Virus record (IMG/VR): IMGVR_UViG_3300033995_001164
Coordinates: 245,178-309,177 of that record
Length of the DNA: 64,000 nucleotides
Reading direction: 5' to 3' (one strand)
Shown here one piece after another: positions 29,635-64,000 of the stretch. The position numbers were made by a program, and so were the translations under genes. Numbering within the stretch: the first letter of the stretch is position 1; each line of letters begins with the position of its first letter. The notes under the pieces were generated by a model. It made no database searches. It saw only the letters and a program-made list of their open reading frames with translations, and was not told the origin of the DNA.

Positions 29635-29852
29635 AATTTGTATTGTTCCTCCACCAGACTTTTTTTTCCGAAATAAATCAATGTGGGTTGTTGTCACCTC
29701 CAATTTGTAATGTTCCTCCACCTTTTTCCTTTTTCGATGTAACGCAAAAGCGTTGTTGTCACCTCCAATTTGTAATGTTCCTCCACCAATAAACACGGCT
29801 CAAATATTCATCAATAGTTGTTGTCACCTCCAATTTGTAATGTTCCTCCACC
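29635..29852 (-). CRISPR. CRISPR-like array beginning inside the 3' end of gene 29759-30106
   Basis: Three identical 36-bp repeats GTTGTTGTCACCTCCAATTTGTAATGTTCCTCCACC (29687-29722, 29752-29787, 29817-29852) plus a partial copy at 29635-29655; unique spacers of 31, 29 and 29 nt. Confidence 0.85.
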
Positions 29853-30106
29853 CACGCTTTCGTTAGGTCTTCTATTTCCTCATTATTTAACTCAAAAAAG
29901 GATTTCAAAAATGACCAAATATGAGTATAAGAGACATGAGCAACCCCATTTTTTTCATTATAGTCAAACATAACTTCACCATCTTTCATAAAGAATATGT
30001 GGTTAGGGTATTCGTCTGTTTTATATGGTTTCAAATCACCATATTCGGTGTTAAGGTATTTGAGAATACCTCGATTTTTTTGACTTTCTGTTATAATGTA
30101 TTTCAT
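29759..30106 (-). CDS. ITE-leader protein whose C-terminus is encoded by repeat plus spacer
   Basis: ...WVEEHYKLEVTTT (repeat) IDEYLSRVY (spacer) WWRNITNWR* (next repeat, shifted frame). Confidence 0.8.
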   Translation of the reverse strand: MKYIITESQKNRGILKYLNTEYGDLKPYKTDEYPNHIFFMKDGEVMFDYNEKNGVAHVSYTHIWSFLKSFFELNNEEIEDLTKAWVEEHYKLEVTTTIDEYLSRVYWWRNITNWR

Positions 30107-44361: not shown

Positions 44362-45315
44362 CTAATTAATTTTAACACCCTTCTCAAGTGTTTCCTCAAG
44401 ATAATCTATAAAAGCTTTTGTTCTATCTTCTTTACCGTGATAATAATTACCATAACCTATTAGTTCTCCACTTTGGTCTGGTAATGGTTTTATTTCTTTT
44501 ACACCATTCTCAATTATATCACCAATCCAATCAACAACGACCTCATTCAATTTTTTTGTTTTTTTAACTCCATTTTTAATCACACCATCAATTCTTCCTT
44601 TGTGTTGATATACATCATAGTAAGTTTCATTAACACCCTTGTCAATCACCTTATCAATTATGTCTTCTCCCACATATTGTCGTGGGTTAGAACTTTTAAC
44701 ACCATTTTCAAGTGCATCATCAATGTCTCCGGTATATTCACGAGATTCTAATTTTGAAGTCATTTTCACTCCATCTTGTATGACAATTTCAATAACACAA
44801 GAACCATCCATTTGTAATGATTTGTTGGTTAGTTTCACCCCTTTAGTTTTCTTCACACCATCTTGTATGATGTCATCAACCTCACCTTCAGTAATGTTCA
44901 TTTCCAAACAGGTTTCTTTTACTCCGCCTTTAATAACATTTTCAACCCAACTTGTATTATCTTCCGGGTTCCAACAAGTTTCTTTAATCCCATTCTCAAA
45001 AACCTCCATCAGATTATATGATGGTGTTTGAGATGGTGACGCGGTATTCTTAGAACCATTCATTACATTATCTTCTACCCATTTTGTGATGAGGTGTTGG
45101 TTTTGAACAACCTCCAATGAGGCATACCCAAAAAGATTTTTAAAGAAATTAAAATTATACCACAGGGTTTTACTTTCAGTTAATTCTATCACCCATTGTT
45201 TGGACTCCGTAAAGATTAACCAAGTGGAACCATTATGATTATATGTGTCAACACCTTGGACAGAAGAATTAATTAAGGTGTTTATTATTTTTCCCATAAT
45301 CTTTTTATTAGACAT
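44362..45315 (-). CDS. homologue of the 62683 family with about 9 degenerate ~22-aa C-terminal repeats
   Basis: N-terminal WLIF..KQWVIEL..LWYN domain, then [V/I]xxxxxxG[V/I]KxT plus ~10 variable residues. Confidence 0.75.
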   Translation of the reverse strand: MSNKKIMGKIINTLINSSVQGVDTYNHNGSTWLIFTESKQWVIELTESKTLWYNFNFFKNLFGYASLEVVQNQHLITKWVEDNVMNGSKNTASPSQTPSYNLMEVFENGIKETCWNPEDNTSWVENVIKGGVKETCLEMNITEGEVDDIIQDGVKKTKGVKLTNKSLQMDGSCVIEIVIQDGVKMTSKLESREYTGDIDDALENGVKSSNPRQYVGEDIIDKVIDKGVNETYYDVYQHKGRIDGVIKNGVKKTKKLNEVVVDWIGDIIENGVKEIKPLPDQSGELIGYGNYYHGKEDRTKAFIDYLEETLEKGVKIN

Positions 45316-46127
45316 TATTTTTAAATATATTTGGTTGAATCTCAGCATCTTCAAAAGATTCTGTGGATACAAACTCACTTTTCAAATAATTAATTACATG
45401 TTCCATCATCTCGTAATCTTTAAAATCTCCGTTTTTATGTCCAGCCTTCATTAATAAAGACATACCCGCAGCCAACATCATTGTTGATTCCTTAACAGAT
45501 AATGCCTCTTGGTCTTTTGGGAATCCAATGTCAAAGTAGTTTCTATCGTTTTCACGTCTCCACGTTACACCAATTGTTAATCCATCCATTTGTTTCTTTT
45601 TTATTTGACAAAGATACGAATATTATTTTATATTTCCAAAAAAGTATGAGCAATAAAAAACCCACTGATTTGTGATAGGATTAATAATCCAATAAGATTC
45701 TTTGTATTCATAGCACACAAATCCCTCAATGGAATTATTTAGAACTTTATTAATTAACTTTTTCAAACAGTTCAAAGAATTTATCCTTATTGTTTTTTTC
45801 AGGGGGGAATATAAATGACTGAACATGGAATGATACAAATCCCATCTCACTACCGTAAGTCATTTTAAAATAATCATTAATCTCCGTACTATATTCATGT
45901 TTACTTTTCTTCATTCCATTGTGGTTATCAAAATGGATGTCAACTCCAACCAAATATTTATATATCGGGGAGAAGTTTATTGGGTCATATATAATTTGTT
46001 CCCTATATCCTGTGGAAACAACATCAATAATCTCGGGGCACATCTTCAGTATGACAACCTTTAATGTATCGGGGACTTCAATTTTCTTATCGTTCGGGGA
46101 TGGAAATAAAGTATCTTCATTTTTCAT
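45308..46127 (-). CDS. three hypothetical proteins (45308-45589, 45623-45850, 45750-46127)
   Basis: ORF track. Confidence 0.5.
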
Positions 46128-46177
46128 ATACTACTTTTTTACAAAGATATAACAAAGATTCCACATAACCAAAAAAA

Positions 46178-46240
46178 GGGTTGGGATTCCATCGAACGAA
46201 GTGAGTGACCGGACGAAGTGAGTGACCGGACGAAGTGAGA
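46178..46240 (-). repeat. dispersed intergenic element, copy 1 of 5, with an internal 17-bp tandem repeat
   Basis: GGGATTCCATCGAACGAAGTGAG core; other copies at 48545-48585, 49996-50030, 50579-50620, 51362-51402. Confidence 0.9.
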
Positions 46241-46648: not shown

Positions 46649-46773
46649 AATGAATATACCTTATGGAATAAAAGTATAATTCTAATTTATGGTTATGTCA
46701 AATAAAAAACCCCAAATCTAATTAAAGAAATGGGGTATGTTTAAAAACATATTGGTAACATTTTTTTTTTGTG

Positions 46774-47058
46774 TTTAAATTGTAATGATTCCCAACTTGC
46801 TCCCCTGTTAGAGTTAAAATGTTATGTTGTGACTATCTTTCAAATTGTGATGATTCCCAACTTTGAATTTCGTTGAGGCTAACTTACAGCGGTTGCGACT
46901 ACCTTTCAAATTGTGATGATTCCCAACTCAAAATGTTATTCAATTGGGGATTTTATGTTGTAACTACCTTTCAAATTGTGATGATTCCCAACCCTATTAA
47001 CGAGGTTTATATCGGTGTCCTCGTTGTGACTACCTTTAAAATCGAGACACATCCCAAT
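46774..47058 (-). CRISPR. CRISPR array associated with the TnpB/Cas12-like gene
   Basis: Consensus (+) GTTGTGACTACCTTTCAAATTGTGATGATTCCCAAC at 46826-46861, 46892-46927, 46957-46992; half-degenerate copies at 47023-47058 and 46774-46796; spacers 29, 30, 29 and 30 nt. Confidence 0.92.
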
Positions 47059-47255
47059 AATGGCTTTTCAAATGAAATTGTGATAGTCTATCCGTTCTCG
47101 GATAATGAGGTTTTGAGACCCCTAGCCGCCTAACCGTTCCGGCAATCACACGTTGACCGTGTTCTTTTACCCGGGTTATATCTGCATACAGTGTTTTAAC
47201 CTTTTAACGTGTTACACACACGCGAGTTACCAATATGTTTAAGAACTTTTTTATT
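47059..47255 (-). ncRNA. putative omegaRNA/tracrRNA-like scaffold
   Basis: Non-coding and GC-richer; hairpin 47089-47104; 47141-47150 reads UGUGAUUGCC on minus and can pair with repeat GGUAGUCACA. Confidence 0.7.
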
Positions 47256-47261
47256 ATGATA

Positions 47262-47269
47262 CAAAGATA
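47262..47269 (-). promoter_or_regulatory. TATCTTTG box driving the scaffold and array
   Basis: 5 nt after the nuclease stop codon, pointing into the non-coding region. Confidence 0.7.
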
Positions 47270-47274
47270 AGTAA

Positions 47275-48477
47275 TTATTCTCTAACTAACAAACTTTCTC
47301 TGATATTTTTTGCTGCGTTTATATCTCTATCGTGGTGTTCCTCACAAGACTTACAGGTCCATTCCCTTTGGGATAACTTTAACTCAGTATTTATATCCCC
47401 ACAGTTAGAACAAGTCTTACTTGTATTACGGGGGTCAATCCTATTAAATTCAATTCCTTTTGAATTACAAACACTTCCCAAATAATCGACAAATGAACGA
47501 ATCCCGATTCTTGCAGTGGATTTAGCCATATGTTTATTCTGTAACATAAATGACAAACGAATATCCTCAACTTGTATTTTAGAAAACTTACCTTTAGTTA
47601 AAACACCAACAACATATCTGTGATATTCTTTTCTAATATTATTTAATTCATTCTGTAATCTACCCTTCTTCTCAATTACTCTCCAATAATTTTTGGATTT
47701 AGGTTTACCCTTGTTTAATCTGTTCTTACGAGATATACTCTTTTGAATAATTGAAATCTTATCTTCCAATTTTTTAATCCTCTCAATTGGTACCTGATAT
47801 TTAAGTCCTTCGGATGTAATTGCCATATCTTTAATACCTACATCAATTCCCAATGATTTACCCGAACTATTAATCTTAACAATTTCAGTATCCTTTAAAT
47901 CCAATGTTAAAGATAAATACCAATTACCATCAGACTTCCTATGGATTGACATTAACTTTGGTGTAGACCCTTTGAATTGTTTATGAAACTTACATTTTAT
48001 AATTGGATTTATCCCAACTTTTTTAAGTAAAGTAGGAGCAAACCTAATTTCATTATTATCCCAATCCAAACTTAAACTTCCACGACTAATACTATTTGAA
48101 TTAGTCGTTAATTTCAATATATTCGTTTTTTTCTTATACGAAGGTTTTCTTGATTTTGGTTTTTTTCTGAAATTTTTAATTGATGTGACCAAAGATTCAG
48201 AAACATATTCCCTAAATATTGATGGAACATTATCAAACCAATTAATCGTTGAAAGATAATTAGAGAAAAGAGATTTACTCTTTAAGTTCGGAGCAGGAAA
48301 GTCCTTAAAATCTTTCCCATCAATAAATTCACTAACCAAAAGATTATATCCCCCTCTTAATTTATTACCAATATCAAATAACCATCTCTTTTGTTTATCA
48401 TCCGGGTATATCCTATACTCAACTGATACTCCAACATAAGATGGACCCTTTTTTCTTTCAACCAAAAAATGATTCAT
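47275..48477 (-). CDS. tnpB: TnpB/Cas12f-like RNA-guided nuclease, 400 aa
   Basis: YRIYP N-terminus, RuvC-I GIDVG, RuvC-II VED, zinc finger CSNC/CKSC, RuvC-III DRDINAAKNI; start 48477 follows TATATTTG at 48497-48504. Confidence 0.93.
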   Translation of the reverse strand: MNHFLVERKKGPSYVGVSVEYRIYPDDKQKRWLFDIGNKLRGGYNLLVSEFIDGKDFKDFPAPNLKSKSLFSNYLSTINWFDNVPSIFREYVSESLVTSIKNFRKKPKSRKPSYKKKTNILKLTTNSNSISRGSLSLDWDNNEIRFAPTLLKKVGINPIIKCKFHKQFKGSTPKLMSIHRKSDGNWYLSLTLDLKDTEIVKINSSGKSLGIDVGIKDMAITSEGLKYQVPIERIKKLEDKISIIQKSISRKNRLNKGKPKSKNYWRVIEKKGRLQNELNNIRKEYHRYVVGVLTKGKFSKIQVEDIRLSFMLQNKHMAKSTARIGIRSFVDYLGSVCNSKGIEFNRIDPRNTSKTCSNCGDINTELKLSQREWTCKSCEEHHDRDINAAKNIRESLLVRE

Positions 48478-48598
48478 ATATAATTTATTTAGAAAGCAAA
48501 TATAAAACAAAGAATTCAAATCACCAAATATATAATGAAAAAAAGGAATGGGATTCCCTCGAACGAAGTGAGAAACCGGACGAAGAGCACTATACGAA

Positions 48599-49929
48599 TT
48601 ACTCATCAGCAGGGATATTATTTAACCAATTATTAAAATATTGTGAAGTATCCACATGATTTAATCCAAATAGTTTTCTTATACTATTGTATAACTCAGA
48701 CTTCATAGATATTTTACTAACACTATGTGGTCTCGAACCAACCTTAACTCCATTCACAATATAATAATAACTAAACATCTTAAACGCCCTCTCAAAATGG
48801 TTACTCTCTTTCGATACCGATAAGGTGGGGTTATCACCAACAATAGAATTAAGATATTCATGAACCAATTTTTCCATTATGTTGTTTCATTAATATCGGA
48901 CATCACATAACCTTCAGGTGGAAAATGAACCAAACATCTTCCACTCTCTTTATAACAAGTACAATCCAATTCATCATCAATCTCAAATGAAGCACTGCTC
49001 ACCTTATCTTCGTAATTTGTGAAGAAATCATTAAAGATTCCCGTAATGGTCATTTTCTTTTTCACCTTACTTATTTTTTGAATAGTGAAACCCTTTGAGG
49101 GTCTATTGTTATCACAATGTTATTACTTGAATCCGCATACGAAGCAATGTCATCATCCAATAACATTTTATGGATATTATCATCATAATAAATCACCACA
49201 TCATTGTATGAGTAATGTGGGTAATGATTTTTGATTGGTTCCAATAGAACAACATCAGTACATTGACTAATGGCACCGTCCATAATGGATTTAATTAGTT
49301 CATAATAATATTGATTTCGGTTTTTCTTATACTCGTTCAATATATCAATTCGAGATAAGGGTTCAGTTGTTTTTGGTTTGGAGTTCCACATCATTTTTTA
49401 CTATTTCTATTAATTTTTTAAGACATTACATATTAAAGCTAACAATGGTAATGATAAGAGTAATAATGAAATTACTAACCCCCAATAATCTTTTATTTTT
49501 TGCATATTTCTATTAATTTTTTAAGTTTTGCTTCTTAACAATTTCTATCAACTTGACCAAACATTCAAGTTCTGCTTCTTCGTAAGTTTGAAAAAAAGTA
49601 TCCCATATTAATCCGCCTATTCTAAAATCACTATTATATTCAGTGATATTATCTTGGATATACCAACAATAAGGTTGTTGATATTTGTTTTCTTTAGTAA
49701 TCCAACTATCTAAATTATACTTCTCTCTAAACCATCTAAATGCTTGTTGGTAAAGTGGTGCTACAAATGTTGTTTTAGATTCTAATCTAAATTGAAAAGG
49801 AGCAGATATAGTTTCATTTGATATATAAACCTCTCTATCTTTACCTACATAATATCCTAAACAAGGTTCATCAAATCCTAATTCTTTTAAAGCTAATGCT
49901 TGTTCGTAAGGTATAAATTCTTTTTCCAT
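48599..49929 (-). CDS. four hypothetical proteins (48599-48877, 48877-49065, 49071-49394, 49513-49929)
   Basis: ORF track; 49513 has LKELGFDEPC..APLYQQAFRWFREKY..YEEAE. Confidence 0.6.
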
Positions 49930-50081
49930 AATTTTTTATTTAGAAAGCAAAGATATAATAAATTTTTTATTCCACCAAATATATAATAAAAAAAAGGGTT
50001 GGGATTCCATCGAACGAAGTGAGTCCGAACTGGGAGAGACCATAATTTGTTAATCCCAAAATTATTCCATATATTTAACCC

Positions 50082-50564: not shown

Positions 50565-50738
50565 ATTCTAAAAAAAAAGGGGATGGGATTCCATCGAACG
50601 AAGTGAGTCCGGACTGGAAGGTATACGAATATCCCCTCCAATTAAAATATTAATCAAATCACCTTCAGTAAGTCTAACAATATTCCCCATATTAAATTTA
50701 TTTATTATAAATACTCAACAATTAGGGTATTTATTAAT

Positions 50739-51334: not shown

Positions 51335-51431
51335 ATTGATAAATACTTGACTATCAAAAAAGGGCTGGGATTCCATCGAACGAAGTGAGTCCGGACTGGA
51401 AGGTATATGAATAACCCCGCCCATTATAATA

Positions 51432-52052
51432 TTAATCAAATCGAATTATTCGATATTCATTAGTGTTAGGATAGAATTCCACATTCTCATCATATTGTTC
51501 CTGAGTCAATTCCCGACACTTATCCAATATGTCCTTTATCCCACCATTACAGATGGTATATCCTTTCTGTATATATTTCTGAACTCTTCTCAAAGAATCA
51601 AAGACAAATAATGGTTCAAGATGATTTATAATAATCCTCTTATGGTAAACATCCAATAAACCGGAGGGGTTACATATAACCTTCTCCCCATCAAACATAA
51701 ACTGACATACCGTAAAATCAAATGAATCAATAATATCCGTTAATTTATCATATTCCCTATATATAATCTGAACCTTAATCTTACCCTTTCTATAAGTCCT
51801 CAAGTTCTCATTGAAATAAACCAATTTATAACCATTACCCTTAGATAGATTCAACTTAACAAATAAATCCAAATCCTCTTTAGTTAATCCAAAGATGTCT
51901 ATATCACTATACTCATCCCCAAATAAACTATCCCGGACGGCTCCACCGGCAATTACAACATTCATCCTGTCCTTTTTCTCATCATCCCTAATAAAATTGA
52001 AATTAGGTAATTTAGTTAATAAAGAATCTTTCGGTAATTCACAATACTCCAT
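51432..52052 (-). CDS. nucleotidyltransferase (CCA-adding/poly(A) polymerase head-like)
   Basis: IAGGAVRD..SDIDIF, FDFTVCQ. Confidence 0.8.
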   Translation of the reverse strand: MEYCELPKDSLLTKLPNFNFIRDDEKKDRMNVVIAGGAVRDSLFGDEYSDIDIFGLTKEDLDLFVKLNLSKGNGYKLVYFNENLRTYRKGKIKVQIIYREYDKLTDIIDSFDFTVCQFMFDGEKVICNPSGLLDVYHKRIIINHLEPLFVFDSLRRVQKYIQKGYTICNGGIKDILDKCRELTQEQYDENVEFYPNTNEYRIIRFD

Positions 52053-54772: not shown

Positions 54773-55825
54773 ATGAATAAACCCACCCATCCTGAAATTA
54801 TTGAGAAAGTATTGCTTCGTCTTATTAGAACGGAGTATCCTTCCGTGGAGGGAACAAGGATTGTTCATATATTTGGTAAGGGCTACAGTAAATATCATGT
54901 TTATGTTGGGGTGAGTTATACGGATGTTATTAGAAATAATTACTCTGAGTTTATACCATATGTTAATAACTTAGGTAAATACATTTTACCTCATCCGGAT
55001 ATTATTAAAGTCGTGGGATTTTATACTATATCTGAGTAATCTATTATATGGTCCGGGGCGTTAATCCCCAACCCCTTATATTTATTTAGTATGAAATATA
55101 TTATACCCGAAGAAAAACTTAAGAAACTAATTAAGTCATACATTATGTCTCGTTACAATTCAGTTAGTAAGGTTTACTTTACAAAAAGAAATGTTCATAC
55201 ACCGAGTTTTTTTGAAGGTAATCCCGTTCGAAACATTACTTTAACAATTATTAATATTGAGTTTAATTCCGGTGAGATGGTTCACGGTTATTTAAGTGCA
55301 TCACCATCCCGAACTTTAAGAACAATTCAAAACGATATTAATTCCATGTTTAATCTTGGTATTGGTGACGGCCCCTATTCTTTATGGGATGTTGATGGAA
55401 CTGTGGTTCATTAATCTATTATATGGTCCGAGGCGTTAATCCCCAACCCCTTATATTTATTTAGTATGAAATACATTATAACAGAAAACCAATTAGATAG
55501 ATTCATTAGTAAATGGTTATCCAAGGAATATGCAGATTTGGAAATTTATGACCACGATAATCAACTTTGGTGTTTATATGTTGATAAAGATGGTGAGGTA
55601 ATATTTCTTTATCATACCAAAGACAATGAGTTGTATGTCTCAAAGGATGTTATGAAATTTTTAATCGATATGTTTTCCATTGATGTCGAACAGACTAAGG
55701 ACATACTTAGAGAATGGTTTGAAAAGTACACCGGTTTGAATTCTTATAAGGTTTTATCTTGGGATTTTTTTGATGCGGATTGGAAAAAAATTGTTAGATG
55801 GGAAACAAAAAAACGATTATCTTAA
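54773..55825 (+). CDS. three small genes (54773-55039, 55091-55414, 55466-55825); last two with MKYII leaders
   Basis: ORF track and promoter boxes. Confidence 0.65.
55037..55098 (+). repeat. 62-bp promoter module duplicated at 55412-55473; related copy at 59697-59725
   Basis: TAATCTATTATATGGTCCGRGGCGTTAATCCCCAACCCCTTATATTTATTTAGTATGAAATA, one mismatch between copies. Confidence 0.9.
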
Positions 55826-55864: not shown

Positions 55865-57486
55865 TTACAAACAATCTTTACAATATTTCCATTCTATAAC
55901 TCTCTCACCATCCTCAAAAGTTTTACTACCATTATATGAACACCATTTGTCGTCAGCATAATAAACAACCTCATACCATTCAGAAACACCTAAATCATTT
56001 ATATGAGTTATTTTAGCCAAAACAGAATCTAATTCAGTAGGTGTTTCTTGTTTCCCAACGTGAGTAATTGTAATACCTCTTTCAAGCTCTTGTTTAGGTT
56101 CTTCTTTTGGAATGATGATTTTGTATATCCAAGTGTGATATATGGTTTTATAACTATCAATCTTAACCATCTCACAACTTGGATTTTTAACAAACCATTC
56201 TAAAAACTCATTATCAATAGCTTGTACACCATCATTGATTAATTCTTGGTCTGTTGTTAGGATGATTTTTTTGGCACCATTAAATTTTGTAAAAATTTTA
56301 TCAGTTTCTTGTTTATAAACAACATTATGTTTATCAATACACCAATCTCCATATTTAATATCTTCATCAGAAGTGATGTAGATGTGTTGTCTATTAGATA
56401 AATTATAAATATCAGAACAAAATGTTAGTTCTTCTTTTGATGTAGATTTTGATAACCTACTTGGTTTATCTGTTGGTATTACGTGTATGTTTTTCATAAC
56501 TTTATTTTCTTTTTAAATTGTTCAAACCATTTTTTCAAAGTTACAAATGTCATAATACTTTTTTCATCTTCTTTGATATATTCCATTGCATTTTGATTGA
56601 AATTTTGTAGTAATTCTAATACTTCTTCCTCACTATAACTTCTTTTTTCAAGTTCAGAAATATATCTCAATACACTGATTGGAACTTTCATATAATCTTC
56701 TTCGGCATTAGCTCTGTAATATGTTAAATCTTTAGTTTCTTCAAAATCTTCCAAATTCCATTTAGAAGTGTTAATTACAAATTCTCTTTTAACTCCAATA
56801 CCTTTTTTTAAAGATTTATTTAAGAAATCAACTTCTGTTAATTGTTGCATATCCTTAAAAGGTTTAGGTTCTTGTTTAGGTTTCACTAACTTGTTTGCAG
56901 TTTCTCTTACTTTTTGTTTAATAGATTCAGGTGTTTCATAAAGGATTCTATCTTTAGTTGATTGTTTAGGTTTACCAACTACCATATCTATTTTACCTTT
57001 AGGTATTCCTCTTAATTCCTTTTTATGTTCGCATTTATCACAACCATAGAAGGCACCACAACATTTCCATTCTTCTTTTGGAATGATGATTTTGTAATCA
57101 TATAATTCTGAAGTAAAATGTTTGTATTCTTTTTCAATTTCAACCTCCTCACAATTTGGATTCTTAACAAACCATTCTAAAAAATCATTTGGAATAGGTT
57201 GTACACCATCTTTAATAAGGTCTTGGTCTGTTGTAAGAATGATTGAAAAATAATTAGTATATACAGGAGTTCTCATTTTCATAAATTCTCTGTATTTGTA
57301 AACTTTACCTTCCCAAAAAACATAACCTTCTTCTTTAATTTCTTCATCAGAAGTGATGTAGATGTTTACATTATTTCCTAATGCTTCTTTGATAGGTTTT
57401 ATATCGTGACATCTTGTTAGATTACCTAATTTAGTCATCCAAAACCTACTTGGTTTATCTGTTGGTATTAAGTGTATGTTTTTCAT
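55865..57486 (-). CDS. two tandem mosaic paralogues (55865-56497, 56494-57486)
   Basis: Shared blocks MKNIHxIPTDKPSR, IYITSDE, IILTTDQ..DGVQ..FLEWFVKNP, YKIIIPKEE. Confidence 0.75.
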
Positions 57487-57589
57487 AACCTTATTTTTTT
57501 TACAAAGATACAATTATTTTTCACCCCACCAAACAATTAATAACTTTTTTATAATTAAAAACCCCCACCGTTAAGTGAGGGTTGTTATA

Positions 57590-58153
57590 TTAATAGAATG
57601 TTTTTAATTTCATGTATGGTTCCAAATTATATTTGTCTATAATCTGCTTGAAGATTTGTTGTCTGTTTCTTAAACCCAATATGTTTTTTTTACTAATAAA
57701 TCCATAACCGAATCCTGAATCACCACTTAACCCCACAACTTTATAATATGTTTGGTCATGAAGGTTTGTCGGATATAATCTTGCTGTAAACTTGTAAATC
57801 ATATTGTCTTTTGACCCGAATCTAAAATCCCCTAATTCTTTTTCATCACGATGTAGTGGTCGTGAATTATTGTTTAGTCCAAGTTTTTCAACCAACGCGT
57901 CATGTATATATAACGCCATTTTGTCTGTCGACATATAAACAAGTGGTGTGTGAGTATCCTCACTAAACCCCATAATATCACCATCATAAAGAACCTTTAT
58001 TAAATTATCAATCCCGCCCATTAGTTTGGATGTAACCGCCATCCCTGATTGTTTTAACATGGATTTTAGCGCATCTTTTTTTAATTCGGACTGTTCGTTA
58101 ATAACCCCGCCCATTATCTCGTGTATCCTATGTATGTTCTCTTGTAAGTTCAT
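57590..58153 (-). CDS. 'LQENIHRI' leader protein
   Basis: MNLQENIHRIHEIMGGVINE. Confidence 0.65.
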   Translation of the reverse strand: MNLQENIHRIHEIMGGVINEQSELKKDALKSMLKQSGMAVTSKLMGGIDNLIKVLYDGDIMGFSEDTHTPLVYMSTDKMALYIHDALVEKLGLNNNSRPLHRDEKELGDFRFGSKDNMIYKFTARLYPTNLHDQTYYKVVGLSGDSGFGYGFISKKNILGLRNRQQIFKQIIDKYNLEPYMKLKTFY

Positions 58154-58159
58154 ATTATC

Positions 58160-58247
58160 TTAATTTGTAATGTTCCTCCACCTAATTAAAACGGTATAAA
58201 ATCCATAGTTTGTTTCCGTTACCCTTAAATTATAATGTTCCTCTATC
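58160..58247 (-). CRISPR. single-spacer CRISPR-like unit at a gene 3' end
   Basis: 36-bp repeat 58212-58247, 29-nt spacer 58183-58211, partial repeat 58160-58182 matching the 29.7-kb repeat. Confidence 0.65.
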
Positions 58248-59515
58248 CATTCCTTTGTTAGGTCCCGAATTTGTTTCCATTCCATACCAAACATTGATTG
58301 TAAATATGACCAAATCTCATCATAACTAACATAAACCTCCCCATTTTTTTTATTGTAGTCAAAAACTACTTCATCACCTTTTCTATAATAAATAAAATTG
58401 CGATGTTTTTTAGTTTCAAATGGTATTAAATCACCATACTTATCGTTTAACCATTTCTTGGCAATGTTATTTAATTTACTTTCGTTAATAACCCCCATCA
58501 TCGATTGGATTCTATGTATATTCTCTTGTAAACCCGGTTGTTTTAAATGATTGAATTTAAACTCTATCTTCGCCCCTTTTGGGTCTTGTGGTGTCCATCT
58601 AAATCTCTTACCGATATAATCTTTTAATTCACCCCTCATTTTGATTTTGATTGCGTCTTCCACCTTGGTTGGATTAAGATTAGGGATTTCCCCCTTTAAG
58701 TAGTTCTGTGGTGTATATACCTGTGTGTTGTTTTCTCTTTTAAATACATCATACACATCTATATTAACAATGGCGTTATCATCACCCACCTCTATATTCC
58801 TTACTTTGAACTTTATGTTTGTGTTTGGAACCATTTGTTCCGGGTCTTGATTCCAATAATTGTATGTCTTGGCTGTCTTCTTTCTCTTTGTTAAATCAGG
58901 TTCGATTGTTTTTAATTTCTTTACCTTATTCTTCATTATATCATCATGACTATATCCCCGCTCCAATAGTTTCATCTCATCAGGAGTTAATGTATATACA
59001 CTATCGAATGTATCATCACCCCATCCCACAGGATTGGCATTACTTATTTGTCTACTTGTGGATGAAGAATAATTTTTTGTTACCTCATACCATTTATCAT
59101 CTTTGAATATGTAAATAGGGTACCACCCGTATGATACAACTTTATAGTATGGAGTTCCTTTTGGGTCTTCGGACCAATATCCCTCTAAATTTGAACCTCT
59201 GAATGGTAATTGAGCTATTGTGTATAGTTTCGCCTTTGGATTTGATATAACCTTCCCACTTTGTTTTCTTGGGTCAACAAAGTTTTCCTTCGTTAAGTTT
59301 GAGTAGTCCCCATCTTTTCTAAAGTTTAATACATACAACTCCAAAATATATTGCTCGAATCCTTTAGGTATTCCCATATATGGCGCAAAATTCTTGATGG
59401 CTTCTAATAAAGATGCTCTTGTTCTATTCTTTTTCTTCTCCACATCTAACAACTTGAATAATTTGGAAATTACTCTTAGTGATGGCTCATTGGATTGTTC
59501 TGCTAATCTTATCAT
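58160..59515 (-). CDS. fusion protein ending in a 29759-like domain with one repeat-spacer unit
   Basis: Internal LQENIHRIQSMMGVINES; C-terminus WIEEHYNLRVTET-NYGFYTVLI-RWRNITN*. Confidence 0.75.
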   Translation of the reverse strand: MIRLAEQSNEPSLRVISKLFKLLDVEKKKNRTRASLLEAIKNFAPYMGIPKGFEQYILELYVLNFRKDGDYSNLTKENFVDPRKQSGKVISNPKAKLYTIAQLPFRGSNLEGYWSEDPKGTPYYKVVSYGWYPIYIFKDDKWYEVTKNYSSSTSRQISNANPVGWGDDTFDSVYTLTPDEMKLLERGYSHDDIMKNKVKKLKTIEPDLTKRKKTAKTYNYWNQDPEQMVPNTNIKFKVRNIEVGDDNAIVNIDVYDVFKRENNTQVYTPQNYLKGEIPNLNPTKVEDAIKIKMRGELKDYIGKRFRWTPQDPKGAKIEFKFNHLKQPGLQENIHRIQSMMGVINESKLNNIAKKWLNDKYGDLIPFETKKHRNFIYYRKGDEVVFDYNKKNGEVYVSYDEIWSYLQSMFGMEWKQIRDLTKEWIEEHYNLRVTETNYGFYTVLIRWRNITN

Positions 59516-59777
59516 TATTGATAAATATATGGTCAATAGAAAACCTCCTCGTCGATAATAAGGTTCCGGACTTATATTGTGGGTTTATAAGTCTCAGGAC
59601 TTATATGGTTTTTATCATATAATGAGGAATATATGTCTTTTATCATATATTACACATTTTGGTAATATTATGAAGAACACTTATTATAATCTATCATATG
59701 GTCCGGGGCGTCAATCCCCTACCCCTTTTTTTGTTTATTCATTTCTTTTTTATATCTTTGCCGACAAATATAATACT

Positions 59778-60092: not shown

Positions 60093-60641
60093 ATGACAGA
60101 TAAACTAAAGCATAGAATCATTAACTACCTAAATAAAGAATATTCCGGGATTGTTGATTATGAAACGGATGATTGGAAAGAGCATATATTCTTTATGAAA
60201 GACGGGAAAGTTCTTAATTATTACAGTAAAATAAATGGGGTTGTTTATATCTCTTATTCTAAAATTTGGTCATTATTAGAAACCTTTTTTGGATTAAATT
60301 ATCAGGAAGTACAAGACCTAACAAAAATATGGGTGGAGGGGCATCACAGATTTAAGGTAACAACAACGGTCGAAGAAAGAGGAGAATTGATTGACTTGGT
60401 GGAGGAACATCACAGATTAAACGTAACAACAATCGTGCCGAATTGCTTTGTTCACTGGGACAAGGTGGAGGAACATCACAGATTAAACGTAACAACAACA
60501 AGACATGACCGTTATGGAAATGTTACACCGGAGGAACTTCACAAATTAAAGTCAACAACAACCTTCGGTTGTTTTATCGTTGATTTACCTTTGGTAGAAA
60601 ACCATTACAAATTAAACTACCCCGCTAACGGTGAAATATGA
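60093..60641 (+). CDS. 29759-family protein with a translated repeat-spacer tail
   Basis: Units VEEHHRLNVTTT plus 9-10 variable residues. Confidence 0.8.
   Translation: MTDKLKHRIINYLNKEYSGIVDYETDDWKEHIFFMKDGKVLNYYSKINGVVYISYSKIWSLLETFFGLNYQEVQDLTKIWVEGHHRFKVTTTVEERGELIDLVEEHHRLNVTTIVPNCFVHWDKVEEHHRLNVTTTRHDRYGNVTPEELHKLKSTTTFGCFIVDLPLVENHYKLNYPANGEI
60332..60617 (+). CRISPR. in-frame CRISPR-like array
   Basis: 36-bp repeats at 60332, 60398, 60464, 60527 and a partial at 60593; spacers 30, 30, 27 and 30 nt. Confidence 0.75.
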
Positions 60642-62171: not shown

Positions 62172-62696
62172 ATGGAAATAGATTTATCAAAATATAGTAT
62201 TGGGGAACTTATTGAATTACAGGACAAGATTGATAATACAATACATAACTACAAGGATGGTTATTTGTATATCTGTAATGTTCGTTCATATGGTCACAAT
62301 TGGAGAGACAATTGTATTCATAACATTCATACTCTTCAGCGACTTTGTCATAAGTATGGTGGTGAGGATGGTATTGTTGATGTCTATTCTAATAACCCCG
62401 ACCTTTCTATGATTGAGAACTATGGTGACCTTATGTATATCGTCTCCGAGTCCGACTATACTAAGTGGAAAGATTATGAATATCTTAAAGGTTTTATCCC
62501 CACCATTTCTAAACGATTGGATGAATGGGAGAATAGAGATAATATTCCTTTTCACTCTCGACCATCGTTTGCTCCGATGTATAGTAGAGAAGAGTTAAAT
62601 AATATGGTGGAAAAACTTGCTCACTATGATATGTCTTTTGTTGCTCCCACCCCTTATAAACCGAATGAAAATTTAGACACAGATGATTACAGATAA
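62172..62696 (+). CDS. hypothetical protein
   Basis: Start MEIDLS after the TATCTTTG box. Confidence 0.6.
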   Translation: MEIDLSKYSIGELIELQDKIDNTIHNYKDGYLYICNVRSYGHNWRDNCIHNIHTLQRLCHKYGGEDGIVDVYSNNPDLSMIENYGDLMYIVSESDYTKWKDYEYLKGFIPTISKRLDEWENRDNIPFHSRPSFAPMYSREELNNMVEKLAHYDMSFVAPTPYKPNENLDTDDYR

Positions 62697-63207
62697 ATTT
62701 AAAAGAACAATTTTTGATAAATTAACCGATGACCTATCTCATGTGGAATTGATTTTCTACAATGACTCCCTTTGGTTTATTAACCGAGAAAAGAAGTATT
62801 GGTATTTGGAATTAGAAAAATCAGGTAAATTATATTGGAGATGGCAATTCTTTACTAATTTTTTCTCTCCATTCACAATGGAACGAAATGAATATGAACC
62901 ACTTATAAAAGAATGGGTAGAGTCAGCATTAAATTGCGGGGTTACAACAACAGTAAACAAGGATTCAATCGCCGGATGGACGGTAGAGTCAGCATTAAAT
63001 TGCGGGGTCACAACAACTCAAATAGGCACCATCAAAAAACTGAAATGGGTAGAGTCAGCATTAAATTGTGGGGTGACAACAACGTTGTTGATGAAATTCC
63101 ACCAAAAACTATTGGTAGAGTCAGCATTAAATTGTGGGGTGACAACAACAGTACCATCTAAGTTATCCGTTGCAATAAAGGTGGAGTCAGTATTAAATGG
63201 ATTATAA
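62683..63207 (+). CDS. protein with a translated repeat-spacer tail
   Basis: Four units of VESALNCGVTTT plus 10 variable residues. Confidence 0.85.
   Translation: MITDKFKRTIFDKLTDDLSHVELIFYNDSLWFINREKKYWYLELEKSGKLYWRWQFFTNFFSPFTMERNEYEPLIKEWVESALNCGVTTTVNKDSIAGWTVESALNCGVTTTQIGTIKKLKWVESALNCGVTTTLLMKFHQKLLVESALNCGVTTTVPSKLSVAIKVESVLNGL
62916..63200 (+). CRISPR. in-frame CRISPR-like array
   Basis: GGTAGAGTCAGCATTAAATTGYGGGGTBACAACAAC at 62916, 62982, 63048, 63114 and a partial at 63180; four unique 30-nt spacers. Confidence 0.85.
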
Positions 63208-63272
63208 TCTCTTATTTATCCCGAGGAGTTATATCCCCACCCCTTATAAACCGAATGAAAATTTAGATACAG

Positions 63273-63734
63273 ATGATTACAGATAAATTTAAAAGAACAA
63301 TTTTTGATAAATTGAGTGAAGATTTATCCCATGTTGAGATAATATCATACCGTGATTCCTTTTGGTTTATTAACCGAGAGAAAAAATATTGGTATTTGGA
63401 ATTTAAATCTTCAGGCGAACTATATTGGAGATGGCAATTCTTTATTGAATTTTTTGAATTATTCACGATGGAGAGAAACCAATTCGAGCCAATCATATTA
63501 GAATGGGTAGAGAAAGTATTAAACCATGAGTTAATAACAACTGAAATCAATATTGGTAATCATGTAGGTATCGAAGAAGTCCTAAATGGCGGAGTGAAAA
63601 CATCGTATAGAGCAAATAAAGACGGATTTTTGGTGAGTTATATATTAAAGAAAGGTGTCACGGCAACCATTAGTAATCATATACGTGGTCTCAAATGTGT
63701 GGAGGAAATATTAAATAATGGAACAACAATATGA
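63273..63734 (+). CDS. paralogue of 62683 with decayed 21-22-aa repeats
   Basis: Near-identical N-terminus; VEKVLNHELITT, IEEVLNGGVKTS, VSYILKKGVTAT, VEEILNNG. Confidence 0.8.
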   Translation: MITDKFKRTIFDKLSEDLSHVEIISYRDSFWFINREKKYWYLEFKSSGELYWRWQFFIEFFELFTMERNQFEPIILEWVEKVLNHELITTEINIGNHVGIEEVLNGGVKTSYRANKDGFLVSYILKKGVTATISNHIRGLKCVEEILNNGTTI

Positions 63735-64000
63735 TTACAGATAAACTAAAACAATTTATTTTTAATAAATTAACCGATGACCTATCTCATGTGGAATTGA
63801 TTTCATATGAAGATTCCTTTTGGTTCATAGATAGAGAAAACAAATATTGGTATTTGGAATTTCAAAAGTCCGGCAGATTATATTGGAGATGGGGATTTTT
63901 TTCCAATTTTTTCCAATTATTTTGTATGGAAAGAGATGAATATGAACCACTTATCACCGAATGGGTGGAGTCAGTCCTAAATGGTGGGGTAACAACAACA
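63731..64000 (+). CDS. third paralogue, truncated by the window end; first repeat at 63964-63999
   Basis: MITDKLKQFIFNKL...EWVESVLNGGVTTT. Confidence 0.8.
   Translation, partial: MITDKLKQFIFNKLTDDLSHVELISYEDSFWFIDRENKYWYLEFQKSGRLYWRWGFFSNFFQLFCMERDEYEPLITEWVESVLNGGVTTT

What the first reader, a model, noticed from the sequence alone, without database searches (positions are those of the whole stretch)
58160..58247. Minimal stage: one spacer inserted at the end of a fusion gene
Seen: repeat, 29-nt spacer, then a partial repeat, giving the same frameshifted tail (WRNITN) as gene 29759. In all five clear arrays, including the TnpB one, the transcript-distal repeat keeps only its first ~21-25 nt. 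This shared polarity points to a common mechanism.
Basis: seen in the sequence. Interest (0 to 1): 0.6.

Follow-up and report, generated by a model that had tools for sequence, protein, structure and literature searches.

The report
One-spacer CRISPR-like array ending a phage gene
The 88 bases are a real one-spacer, CRISPR-like unit whose first repeat is also the last 12 codons of a jumbo-phage gene; it belongs to a widespread, fast-changing family of such gene-end arrays, which is unusual because CRISPR arrays are normally non-coding.

Summary
Observation confirmed. On the minus strand, 58247-58212 is a 36-nt repeat, 58211-58183 a 29-nt spacer and 58182-58160 a 23-nt partial repeat. These end the 458-aa ORF with the tail WRNITN*. 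The window is the end of a 309-kb lake-water jumbo phage that carries six such arrays plus one behind a TnpB/TranC-like nuclease, and has no Cas1/Cas2.

The "fusion gene" is real: relatives keep the 330-aa N-terminal part as a separate gene. The fusion has nothing to do with the spacer.

"Minimal stage" holds as a description of the anatomy, not as a nascent insertion:
- Repeat, 29-nt spacer, truncated repeat and WRNITN* is the commonest natural form of this gene family (57 of 99 homologues).
- No spacer-less allele was found.
- This copy's first repeat has drifted.
- The locus is identical in four lake runs from 2020-2024.

The shared mechanism is supported. Near-identical alleles of sister array A share the distal spacer and differ by independent 29+36-bp units at the gene-proximal end. 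One-spacer alleles with 95-100% identical domains carry unrelated spacers.

Spacers are depleted of stop codons (17% against about 50% expected). The truncated repeat gives stops in all three frames at the next gene's ATG, which suggests translational coupling.

Who integrates the spacers, and which effector (if any) uses them, remains inferred. No protospacers were found.

The parts
58212..58247 (-). First repeat (36 nt). It also codes the last 12 residues, IEEHYNLRVTET, of the family domain. It is a drifted copy of the array repeat.
   Evidence: 25/36 identical to the array A repeat, 30/36 to the L055 repeat. It has no predicted RNA hairpin. In the AF2 model of a paralogue, the first 5 repeat-coded residues belong to the last helix of the domain.
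58183..58211 (-). 29-nt spacer (21% GC), unique and free of stops in the reading frame.
   Evidence: No match was found elsewhere in the phage genome, in GenBank phages, in IMG/VR or in about 0.5 Mb of related loci.
58160..58182 (-). Truncated terminal repeat (23 nt). Read in the +2 frame it gives WRNITN and the ORF's stop (58160-58162). The other two frames also reach stops here or just downstream (down to 58150), at or next to the next gene's ATG.
   Evidence: 21/21 identical to the array A repeat; the three frames stop 6 nt before, 1 nt before, or overlapping (ATGA) the ATG at 58153.
57590..58153 (-). Downstream gene (187 aa) whose ATG lies 6 nt after the array ORF's stop.
   Evidence: An orthologue is present in relatives L013/L016.
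58160..59536 (-). Fusion ORF (458 aa). It joins an N-terminal protein of ~333 aa (separate in relatives) to a family domain carrying the MNLQENIHRI-type tag (about 58212-58531).
   Evidence: No Pfam or PHROG family matched.
29635..29852 (-). Array A: 3 identical repeats, spacers of 29, 29 and 31 nt, and a truncated repeat. It follows gene 29759..30106 of the same family.
   Evidence: The allele series with 1, 2 and 3 spacers is.
46774..47058 (-). Array B: a first repeat degenerate in its 5' half, 3 full repeats, 4 spacers (30, 29, 30, 29 nt) and a truncated repeat. The repeats resemble type VI-B repeats.
   Evidence: The repeat is 27-28/36 identical to the repeat of a Cas13b-linked array in Sphingobacterium hungaricum.
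47059..48606 (-). TnpB/TranC-like nuclease gene (ORF 47275..48606, with the true start probably near 48477), followed by a ~215-nt conserved non-coding scaffold (47059-47274).
   Evidence: Pfam PF07282 at 2.5e-20 and phrog_506. PDB relatives are TnpB and LaTranC. The RuvC motifs are kept. The scaffold is over 90% conserved against L048.
60332..60628 (+). Array C, lying inside ORF 60093..60641. It has 4 spacers (30, 30, 27, 30 nt), all in frame and free of stops.
   Evidence: Alleles P0065 and P0066 lack one or two units. Run X24 skips exactly 66 bp, 60398-60463.
62916..63198 (+). Array D, lying inside ORF 62683..63207. It has 4 spacers of 30 nt, all in frame.
   Evidence: The 63 homologues have lengths of 108+22n aa.
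63506..63999 (+). A decayed in-frame array in ORF 63273..63734, and the first repeat (63964-63999) of a further array that is cut by the record's end.
   Evidence: The full array, with 6 more in-frame units, is seen in contig G006 (L051/L060).
44362..45378 (-). ORF made of a family-like domain plus about 10 decayed 22-aa units with the motif VE..I..GVK.T.

Best explanation
The feature is a single-slot member of a phage-borne, CRISPR-like array system.

Shown:
- In this system the 3' end of a small paralogous gene (at least 24 copies in this 309-kb lake phage) plays the part of leader and first repeat. The 36-nt repeat is the gene's last 12 codons. It is followed by one or more unique 29-31-nt spacers and a terminal repeat truncated after ~21-24 nt.
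- In sister loci the arrays change by polarised addition of spacer-plus-repeat units at the gene-proximal repeat and by unit loss.
- One-spacer alleles swap their spacer wholesale.
- Spacers with stop codons are counter-selected.
- The truncated repeat places stops in all three frames at the next gene's start.

Inferred:
- Integration is done in trans, by a host Cas1-Cas2-type integrase or an unknown phage factor. The phage itself has no Cas1, Cas2, TnpA or reverse transcriptase.
- The stop-free requirement reflects translational coupling, or protection of a polycistronic mRNA.
- The transcript supplies a repeat-then-guide RNA. The only intact configuration in one-spacer forms is full repeat followed by spacer, which fits a type V/TnpB-like effector such as the phage's own TnpB/TranC-like nuclease.

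This particular copy has a drifted first repeat and is invariant in nature. It is probably an old, slow or inactive slot that was carried into the fusion gene by cassette recombination at the conserved N-terminal tag.
For: Anatomy and non-randomness.

Same architecture in other phage contigs with different spacers: L023, L032, L033, L041, L055, L075.

Polarised growth by 29 nt + 36 bp in near-identical backgrounds. A 66-bp unit present or absent between lake runs. Protein allele series sharing distal units and differing in proximal units.

Wholesale spacer replacement: 21 of 22 pairs of one-spacer alleles with at least 90% identical domains have unrelated spacers.

Stop depletion: 17/99 against an expected 47-55%, binomial p <= 7e-10. 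In the in-frame arrays seen at DNA level, 19 of 19 spacers are multiples of 3 and open.

Stops in three frames at the next ATG.

No Cas1/Cas2, TnpA, serine recombinase, RT or Cas13b in the phage.

One TnpB-like gene with intact RuvC motifs, a conserved scaffold and its own array; a second phage lineage (G009) has both this module and a gene-end array.

Huge phages with arrays but no adaptation genes are known: PMC7162821.
Against: - No protospacer was found for any spacer tested, so guide function is unproven.
- There is no RNA data: all 24 runs that hold the locus are DNA.
- There is no significant anti-repeat complementarity between the TnpB scaffold and any repeat.
- A 34-nt indel separates scaffold and array in the two phages.
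- Gene-end repeats are only 15-19/36 identical (ungapped) to the TnpB-linked or Cas13b-type repeats. Use by the same effector is therefore a guess.
- Other array-bearing contigs lack TnpB, but they are fragments.
- The locus itself shows no variation and its first repeat has lost the conserved 3' end.
- Clustering of the protein database at 90% identity removes same-spacer pairs and inflates the apparent turnover.
Confidence: 0.55

Rival explanations
1. The repeats are decoys or hijackers of a host type VI-B (Cas13b) system. Repeat-bearing mRNAs would be bound or processed by host Cas13b, titrating it (as RNA anti-CRISPRs or extraneous crRNAs do) or loading it with phage-chosen guides.
For: - Array B's repeat is 27-28/36 identical to a repeat next to a bona fide Cas13b gene in Sphingobacterium hungaricum, in the same orientation. 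Both arrays start with a first repeat degenerate in its 5' half.
- The B repeat folds like the bacterial repeat.
- Jumbo phages are expected to face RNA-targeting defence.
- Repeat mimics and extraneous crRNAs that sequester Cas proteins are documented (PMC10651486, PMC13187072).
Against: - Cas13b recognises a hairpin formed by the whole repeat and uses a guide-then-repeat order (PMC13187072).
- The gene-end repeats, including this one, do not fold into that hairpin. They are only 17-19/36 identical to the Cas13b repeat.
- In one-spacer forms the spacer is followed only by a 23-nt stump, so no guide-then-repeat crRNA can form.
- A decoy would not need rapid spacer turnover.
Confidence: 0.12
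2. The arrays matter as protein. The repeat-spacer units encode a tandem 22-residue repeat (12 constant + 10 variable residues), possibly a beta-solenoid. This would give the phage hypervariable C-terminal tails. The DNA-level process would then be a protein-diversification device, and the one-spacer unit would simply be a variable tail.
For: - In the D and C subfamilies every spacer is in frame and open.
- Protein lengths step by 22 aa.
- Old arrays have lost DNA identity but keep the peptide motif: ORF 63273..63734, ORF 44362..45378, P0019 and P0053.
- AF2 models the tail as stacked beta-hairpins, with weak matches to beta-helix and LRR folds at Z 5-6.
Against: - Tail pLDDT is below 55 and Z is below 8, so the fold is not established.
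- Variable peptides look like random translation.
- Array B is non-coding.
- Array A and most A-type alleles, including this locus, leave the frame after the first spacer and end in WRNITN*. No repeat protein is made there.
- Translational coupling explains stop depletion without any protein function.
Confidence: 0.15
3. The units are functionless scars. The gene end happens to resemble a host CRISPR leader-repeat junction, and the host adaptation complex mis-integrates spacers into phage DNA (neo-CRISPR formation). Only insertions that do not disturb downstream expression survive.
For: - Exact 36-bp duplication plus 29-31 nt per event.
- No adaptation genes in the phage.
- No targets found.
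- The stop-codon filter is what tolerance, rather than function, would give.
- Off-target integration creating new arrays is described in the literature listed.
Against: - Every one of about 190 homologues keeps at least one spacer, and none is empty.
- The truncated terminal repeat is conserved (21/21) across diverged phages.
- Arrays sit at several paralogues and persist in many lineages.
- Two phage lineages link such arrays with a TnpB-like nuclease module.
- Mis-integration into a virulent phage genome would have to be frequent to give the observed turnover.
Confidence: 0.15
4. There is no array. Two conserved blocks (a constrained protein C-terminus and the translation start region of the next gene) flank a freely drifting linker, and the resemblance to the array A repeat is chance or gene conversion.
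For: The locus shows no polymorphism. Its first repeat is constrained by the protein. The stump overlaps the next gene's start region.
Against: - The 21-mer is identical to the array A repeat, with zero chance expectation.
- Alleles with 95-100% identical domains have unrelated 29-nt spacers, which drift cannot produce.
- Sister loci differ by whole units.
Confidence: 0.03

Closest known systems
Orphan or mini CRISPR arrays and solitary repeat units carried by phages and other mobile elements (huge-phage arrays lacking Cas1/Cas2/Cas4, PMC7162821; viral mini-arrays and RNA anti-CRISPRs, PMC10651486, PMC11656645)
   Same: - Phage-encoded.
- One to a few spacers.
- No adaptation genes in the element.
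- Repeats related to those of a host-type system (array B against a Bacteroidota VI-B repeat).
- Terminal repeat degenerate.
   Different: - The first repeat is the last 12 codons of a protein gene, and that gene takes the place of the leader.
- Many arrays are translated in frame and spacers are filtered against stops.
- Arrays sit at several paralogues.
- The gene-end repeats do not fold like the host-type repeat.
TnpB omega-RNA systems and TranC (transposon-CRISPR intermediate) / miniature type V systems (PDB 8exa, 8h1j, 9jfo; bioRxiv 10.1101/2025.09.28.678669)
   Same: - A ~400-aa TnpB-like RuvC nuclease.
- A conserved ~215-nt non-coding scaffold directly after the gene.
- A repeat-spacer array where the guide would lie.
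- The repeat-then-guide order fits the one-spacer anatomy.
- In TnpB the guide RNA likewise overlaps the 3' end of a coding sequence.
   Different: - The unit studied is 11 kb away from the nuclease and follows an unrelated small gene.
- No scaffold or anti-repeat pairing was detected.
- Array B's repeats are VI-B-like.
- There is no TnpA, and no evidence that the nuclease uses these RNAs.
Type VI-B (Cas13b) CRISPR arrays of Bacteroidota
   Same: - 36-nt repeats with 30-nt spacers.
- G-TG... start and ...ACAAC end.
- Same transcriptional orientation.
- First repeat of array B degenerate in its 5' half, as in the S. hungaricum array.
   Different: - No Cas13b in the phage.
- The gene-end repeats lack the whole-repeat hairpin.
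- The last spacer is not followed by a full repeat, which the guide-then-repeat order needs.
Non-canonical (off-target) spacer integration creating neo-CRISPR loci
   Same: Insertion of one spacer with duplication of a repeat-length stretch at a site outside a canonical array. The one-spacer state is the smallest array.
   Different: No empty site is known here. The distal copy is only 21-24 nt, not a full duplicate. The architecture is conserved and recurrent, not sporadic.
Multi-core precursor peptides and hypervariable tandem-repeat proteins (my own knowledge, not tested)
   Same: Constant flanks that are identical at the DNA level around hypervariable short cassettes inside one ORF.
   Different: Units are added in a polarised, CRISPR-like manner. 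Spacer lengths of 29 and 31 nt also occur. Non-coding and out-of-frame arrays exist.

Membership tests
CRISPR array (generic definition) | Direct repeats of 23-55 nt separated by unique spacers of similar, fixed length | tested here: met
   A 36-nt repeat, a 29-nt spacer and a 23-nt partial repeat. Sister arrays have 3-6 identical repeats with 27-31-nt spacers.
CRISPR array (generic definition) | Repeats within one array nearly identical | tested here: inconclusive
   At this locus the two copies are 20/24 identical. In arrays A, D, D3 and L055 the full repeats are 100% identical.
CRISPR array (generic definition) | Polarised gain of spacer plus repeat duplication at one end | tested here: met
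   Shown for sister array A and by protein allele series. It is not shown for this locus itself, which is invariant in 4 runs.
CRISPR array (generic definition) | Non-coding, preceded by an AT-rich leader | tested here: not met
   The first repeat is inside ORF 58160..59536 and the whole unit is translated.
CRISPR array (generic definition) | Spacers match foreign genetic elements (protospacers) | tested here: not met
   No matches in the phage's own genome, GenBank phages, IMG/VR (exact 21-mers of 3 spacers) or related loci. Sensitivity was limited.
CRISPR-Cas locus | Adjacent cas genes including Cas1/Cas2 | tested here: not met
   No Cas1 above cut-off and no Cas2 in the 309-kb genome. The only effector-like gene is the TnpB-like ORF 11 kb away.
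Type VI-B direct repeat | 36-nt repeat forming an end-paired hairpin (GUUG...CAAC) recognised as a whole by Cas13b | tested here: not met
   The repeat at 58212-58247 has no predicted structure (0 kcal/mol). The A, C and L055 repeats lack the closing stem. Only array B and the bacterial repeat fold so. Identity to the S. hungaricum repeat is 17/36.
Type VI-B direct repeat | Each spacer followed by a full repeat (guide-then-repeat crRNA) | tested here: not met
   The only spacer is followed by a 23-nt stump.
TnpB omega-RNA / TranC guide module | RuvC nuclease of the TnpB family with catalytic motifs | tested here: met
   PF07282 and PF01385. Aligned to ISDra2 TnpB with the GIDVG, VED and HDRD motifs kept. 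This applies to ORF 47275..48606, not to the locus studied.
TnpB omega-RNA / TranC guide module | Guide lies directly 3' of a conserved structured scaffold encoded after the nuclease gene | tested here: not met
   This is true for array B. The studied unit follows an unrelated protein gene, and no scaffold or anti-repeat pairing was found.
TnpB omega-RNA / TranC guide module | RNA bound by the nuclease and directing cleavage next to a TAM/PAM | not testable with these tools
   Needs RIP-seq and a TAM depletion assay.
RNA anti-CRISPR (solitary repeat unit) | Phage-encoded repeat that mimics the host's repeat closely enough to bind its Cas proteins | tested here: inconclusive
   The host is unknown. 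Array B mimics a VI-B repeat at 75-78%. The studied repeat does not (17/36, unstructured).
Tandem-repeat protein | Repeat units read in one frame and conserved at the protein level | tested here: not met
   At this locus the 29-nt spacer shifts the frame (WRNITN*). The feature is met for arrays C, D, D2, D3 and ORF 44362..45378.

The most novel reading that the evidence does not exclude
A CRISPR-type integration process operates inside phage open reading frames. A small gene acts as the leader and its last 12 codons are the repeat, so the phage writes new 29-30-nt inserts into translated mRNA. The repeat either arose from coding sequence or has been reshaped by it. The products would be dual-use: guide RNAs embedded in mRNAs for a TnpB/TranC-like nuclease, and hypervariable 22-residue protein repeats that are later fixed as protein domains. 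This would be a new route both for CRISPR-array birth and for protein diversification.
Probability: 0.3. Interest if true: 0.9.

Novelty: new variant of a known kind. Interest (0 to 1): 0.78.

Why it matters
CRISPR arrays are taken to be non-coding, with a dedicated leader. Here more than 150 natural gene variants from lake phages carry arrays whose first repeat is coding sequence. Their spacers turn over faster than point mutations accumulate, yet the spacers are filtered to stay translatable.

If integration is host-driven, the system shows how arrays can be seeded and kept on virulent phage genomes. If the RNAs feed the phage's TnpB-like nuclease, it is a natural case of guides embedded in mRNAs and of a transposon-derived nuclease served by dispersed arrays. 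That bears on how type V systems arose.

The in-frame arrays, and their decayed descendants that keep only the peptide motif, suggest that array DNA can be turned into protein repeats.

For the finding itself the practical lesson is this: the one-spacer unit is the ground state of the system, not a rare first step.

Tried and rejected
- **Rfam.** A scan of the whole window gave no family.
- **Protein families.** Pfam and PHROGs found nothing for the fusion protein, the family domain or the neighbouring genes.
- **Spacer-less or closer alleles of this locus.** IMG/VR held only an identical copy and a 63% relative that has 4 spacers. JGI metagenome contigs gave nothing closer; most hits matched only the N-terminal tag. 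GenBank phages gave no match to the region.
- **Protospacers.** None in the phage's own genome, GenBank phages (only chance-level E of about 1-3), IMG/VR exact 21-mers of spacers E1, B1 and B3 (self copies only), or all fetched loci.
- **A-type repeat 3' half in bacteria.** In 400 sampled Bacteroidota genomes only scattered single hits appeared, at the level of the reversed-pattern control. No arrays were found.
- **tracrRNA-like pairing.** Scaffold against repeats gave z of about 0 against shuffles. The scaffold fold is not better than shuffles (z -0.47).
- **Distant TnpB relatives.** At 32% identity they have no arrays.
- **TnpB in five other array-bearing contigs.** None found, but these contigs are 4-39% complete.
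- **The 316-kb NCBI genome.** It carries family genes but could not be searched.
- **Fold search.** The domain gave no convincing match (Z <= 4.8). The repeat tail matched beta-helix and LRR folds only at Z 5-6, on a low-confidence model.
- **Spacer GC as a sign of foreign origin.** Overall 36.4% against 31.6% for the genome. The excess lies mainly in the in-frame arrays, so it may reflect stop avoidance.
- **RNA evidence.** None of the 24 runs that hold the locus is RNA.
- It was re-run from coordinates.

Full report
**What is there**

The window is the last 64 kb of a 309,177-bp IMG/VR virus record (about 31% GC; CheckV completeness 100%). The phage is abundant in lake-water metagenomes from 2020-2024.

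The finding lies on the minus strand:
- 58247-58212 is a 36-nt repeat that codes IEEHYNLRVTET.
- 58211-58183 is a 29-nt spacer.
- 58182-58160 is a 23-nt partial repeat.
- ORF 58160..59536 (458 aa) reads this partial repeat in a shifted frame as WRNITN*.

The first 21 nt of the partial repeat are identical to the repeat of array A (29687-29852). That 21-mer occurs seven times in the window, only in arrays, against zero expected.

**Context in the genome**

The repeat is the 3' end of a paralogous gene family:
- The family has at least 24 members in this genome.
- Each member is a domain of about 90 aa with an MKYIITES, MITDK or MNLQENIHRI type N-terminus and a C-terminal W-x-E-x-x-Y-x-L-x-V motif.

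The arrays, all with 36-nt repeats and 27-31-nt spacers, are:
- Array A follows gene 29759.
- Arrays C, D, D2, D3 and one near genome position 3,900 lie inside ORFs.
- Array B follows a TnpB-like gene.

An HMM of the repeats finds no further copies in the genome.

The phage has no Cas1 above cut-off, and no Cas2, Y1 or serine transposase, reverse transcriptase or Cas13b. It has a single TnpB-like gene.

**The fusion**

Ten relatives in IMG/VR carry the N-terminal ~330 aa as a separate gene ending FNHLKQ*. It is followed by various genes, many of which start MNLQENIxRI. In the window the stop and start are replaced, giving HLKQPGLQENIHRIQSMMG, and a family-domain gene is joined on. The fusion is therefore real. 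It sits at the 5' end of the family domain and is unrelated to the spacer.

Only an identical copy of this locus exists elsewhere (L011/L022/L036). The nearest relatives are 58-63% identical, and they carry four spacers (L023) or one (L075).

**Is one spacer a "minimal stage"?**

Protein searches recovered 63 D-type and about 110 A/C-type homologues. Of the 99 classifiable A/C-type proteins:

| Class | Count |
|---|---|
| Full repeat, 29-nt spacer, stump read as (R/W/G)WRNITN* (exactly the architecture of the finding) | 57 |
| Read through in frame 0 | 24 |
| Read through in the third frame | 1 |
| Stop inside the first spacer | 17 |

None lacks a spacer. The architecture survives even in ~50%-identical homologues with decayed repeats, such as P0170. 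The one-spacer unit is thus the ground state of the family, not a rare first step.

At this locus the first repeat has drifted. It is 30/36 identical to the closest active repeat (L055), and the conserved ...ACAACAAC end has become ...ACGGAAAC. It is only 20/24 identical to its own stump. The locus is identical in contigs of four lake runs from 2020 to 2024. A fresh integration would give two identical 36-bp copies, and that is not what is seen.

**Evidence for a common, CRISPR-like process**

1. Three near-identical versions of the array A locus share the distal spacer and all flanks but differ at the gene-proximal end.
   - L158 has only the distal spacer.
   - L159 has one other 29-nt spacer.
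   - The window has two different ones.
   - Each step equals 29 nt plus an exact 36-bp repeat duplication.
   - Deletion alone cannot explain this. These are independent insertions.
2. Run X24 carries a 3.4-kb contig that skips exactly 66 bp (60398-60463), one unit of array C. This matches protein allele P0065.
3. D-type alleles share distal units and differ in proximal ones. Examples are P0006, P0008 and P0002; P0011, P0013, P0017 and P0007; and P0047, P0039, P0025 and P0030.
4. Among the 57 one-spacer alleles, 21 of 22 pairs with at least 90% identical domains have unrelated spacers. Two of those pairs have 100% identical domains. Clustering of the database at 90% hides same-spacer pairs. 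Even so, the many pairs with unrelated spacers show wholesale replacement rather than drift.

It cannot be done for this locus because no empty allele exists.

**Translation constraint**

In arrays C, D, D2, D3 and the one at the genome start, all 19 spacers seen at DNA level are 30 or 27 nt and contain no stops. D-type proteins have lengths of 108+22n aa.

Across the A/C type, only 17% of first spacers contain a stop, against 47-55% expected from composition (p <= 7e-10, ignoring relatedness).

At this locus the stump and the bases after it give stops in all three frames: 6 nt before, 1 nt before, or overlapping the ATG of the next gene. The same layout holds at array A, L023, L055 and L075.

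I infer that ribosomes must traverse the array to reach the next start, through translational coupling or protection of the polycistronic mRNA. This would explain both the stop filter and the conservation of the stump.

A protein-level role is also possible for the in-frame arrays:
- Decayed arrays keep the peptide motif (ORF 63273..63734; ORF 44362..45378 with about 10 units; P0019, P0053).
- AlphaFold models the tail as stacked hairpins, but pLDDT is below 55 and fold matches reach only Z 5-6.
- The N-terminal 85 residues fold confidently (pLDDT about 90) without a recognisable relative. The first five repeat-coded residues complete the last helix of that domain.

**Which effector, and who integrates?**

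The TnpB-like module:
- ORF 47275..48606 is a TnpB-family nuclease (PF07282; PDB relatives are TnpB and LaTranC) with RuvC motifs intact.
- It is followed by a ~215-nt segment that is over 90% conserved in a second phage (L048, protein 83% identical).
- An array follows, with wholly different spacers and a different repeat 5' half. Conserved flank follows again after that.
- That second phage also has a gene-end array with five spacers (L055).

Array B's relation to type VI-B:
- Its repeat is 27-28/36 identical to the repeat of a Sphingobacterium hungaricum array that lies next to Cas13b (NF038190, E 4e-243).
- Both arrays begin with a first repeat degenerate in its 5' half.
- The B repeat and the bacterial repeat fold into the end-paired hairpin. 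The gene-end repeats do not, and the one studied has no predicted structure.
- Gene-end repeats are only 15-19/36 identical (ungapped) to B or to the bacterial repeat. They do share length, spacer size, termini and the form of the truncated last repeat. Kinship is plausible but not shown.

Repeat-guide order:
- Cas13b needs a whole-repeat hairpin after each guide (PMC13187072).
- One-spacer forms have a full repeat only before the spacer.
- A repeat-then-guide (type V/TnpB-like) reading therefore fits the anatomy better than a Cas13b reading.

The case for this reading stays weak. No anti-repeat pairing, no protospacers and no RNA data support it.

Integration in trans by a host adaptation complex is an inference. 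It rests on the exact repeat-length duplication and on the known lack of adaptation genes in huge-phage CRISPR loci (PMC7162821).

**Verdict**

- The sequence feature is real and not chance.
- It is a single-slot member of a phage system of gene-terminal, CRISPR-like arrays.
The "early stage, inserted into a fusion gene" reading is not supported.
- The system lies outside canonical CRISPR definitions: coding first repeat, gene as leader, translated stop-free spacers, no cas neighbourhood. I did not find it described in the papers searched.
- I rate it a new variant of a known kind (phage-borne orphan mini-arrays), with high interest. Function remains open.

Noticed in passing
window 46761-48606 (minus strand); L048:1501-3330: A TnpB/TranC-like nuclease gene is followed by a conserved ~215-nt non-coding segment and then by a CRISPR array. 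The array's repeats are 75-78% identical to a Cas13b-linked repeat of Sphingobacterium hungaricum. A second phage has the same module with different spacers, a different repeat 5' half and a 34-nt indel at the scaffold-array junction.
   Followed up: partly
window 60398-60463: In lake run X24 the dominant contig lacks exactly this 66-bp repeat+spacer unit of array C. The other three runs have it. This is natural unit-level polymorphism.
   Followed up: yes
window 58157 / 58486: All four lake runs show a joint that skips 328 bases between the two MNLQENIHRI-coding stretches, with only 30 letters on one side. It could be a relative or variant lacking the whole family-domain-plus-array cassette, or an alignment effect of the two similar tags. 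It was not resolved.
   Followed up: no
window 58486-58531, 58125-58153 and many loci: Unrelated phage genes share near-identical N-terminal tags (MNLQENIHRIxxMMG; MKYIITES). Most of the 80 metagenome hits matched only the first ~20 residues. The tags look like recombination or expression modules that let gene cassettes be swapped. The fusion gene seems to have arisen at such a tag.
   Followed up: partly
window 44362-45378 (minus strand): A 338-aa ORF consists of a family-like domain followed by about 10 units of 22 residues with the motif VE..I..GVK.T. DNA identity between the units is lost. It looks like an old in-frame array now kept as a protein repeat.
   Followed up: partly
window 63964-64000; L051/L060: The record ends inside an array. 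In a longer contig of the same phage the last gene continues through six more in-frame units (spacers 30, 30, 30, 30, 27 and ~30 nt). Allele P0008 lacks the most gene-proximal unit.
   Followed up: yes
window 46165-46218, 48532-48585, 49983-50076, 50567-50660, 51349-51442: There are five copies of a 54-87-nt element with a conserved core (GGGATTCCATCGAACGAAGTGAG). One copy overlaps the annotated 5' end of the TnpB-like ORF. Its function is unknown.
   Followed up: no
window 55037-55082, 55412-55457, 59687-59732, 63205-63250: There are four copies of a 46-nt intergenic element with a G/C hairpin (GGGG...CCCC) directly upstream of family genes. One sits right after array D. It is probably a terminator/promoter cassette.
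   Followed up: no
window 55865-57513 (minus strand): Two adjacent paralogous genes (210 and 339 aa, both starting MKNIH(V/L)IPTDKPSR) share 84-92% identical DNA blocks (56157/57134, 56454/57443). This is a recent tandem duplication.
   Followed up: no
A/C-type homologues: Among alleles that read through the first spacer, 29-nt spacers (the +2 frame, tail WRNITN*) outnumber 30-nt ones 57 to 24. In multi-spacer arrays 30 nt is as common as 29. Either the WRNITN tail or the stop position is favoured, or the integrase prefers 29 nt.
   Followed up: no
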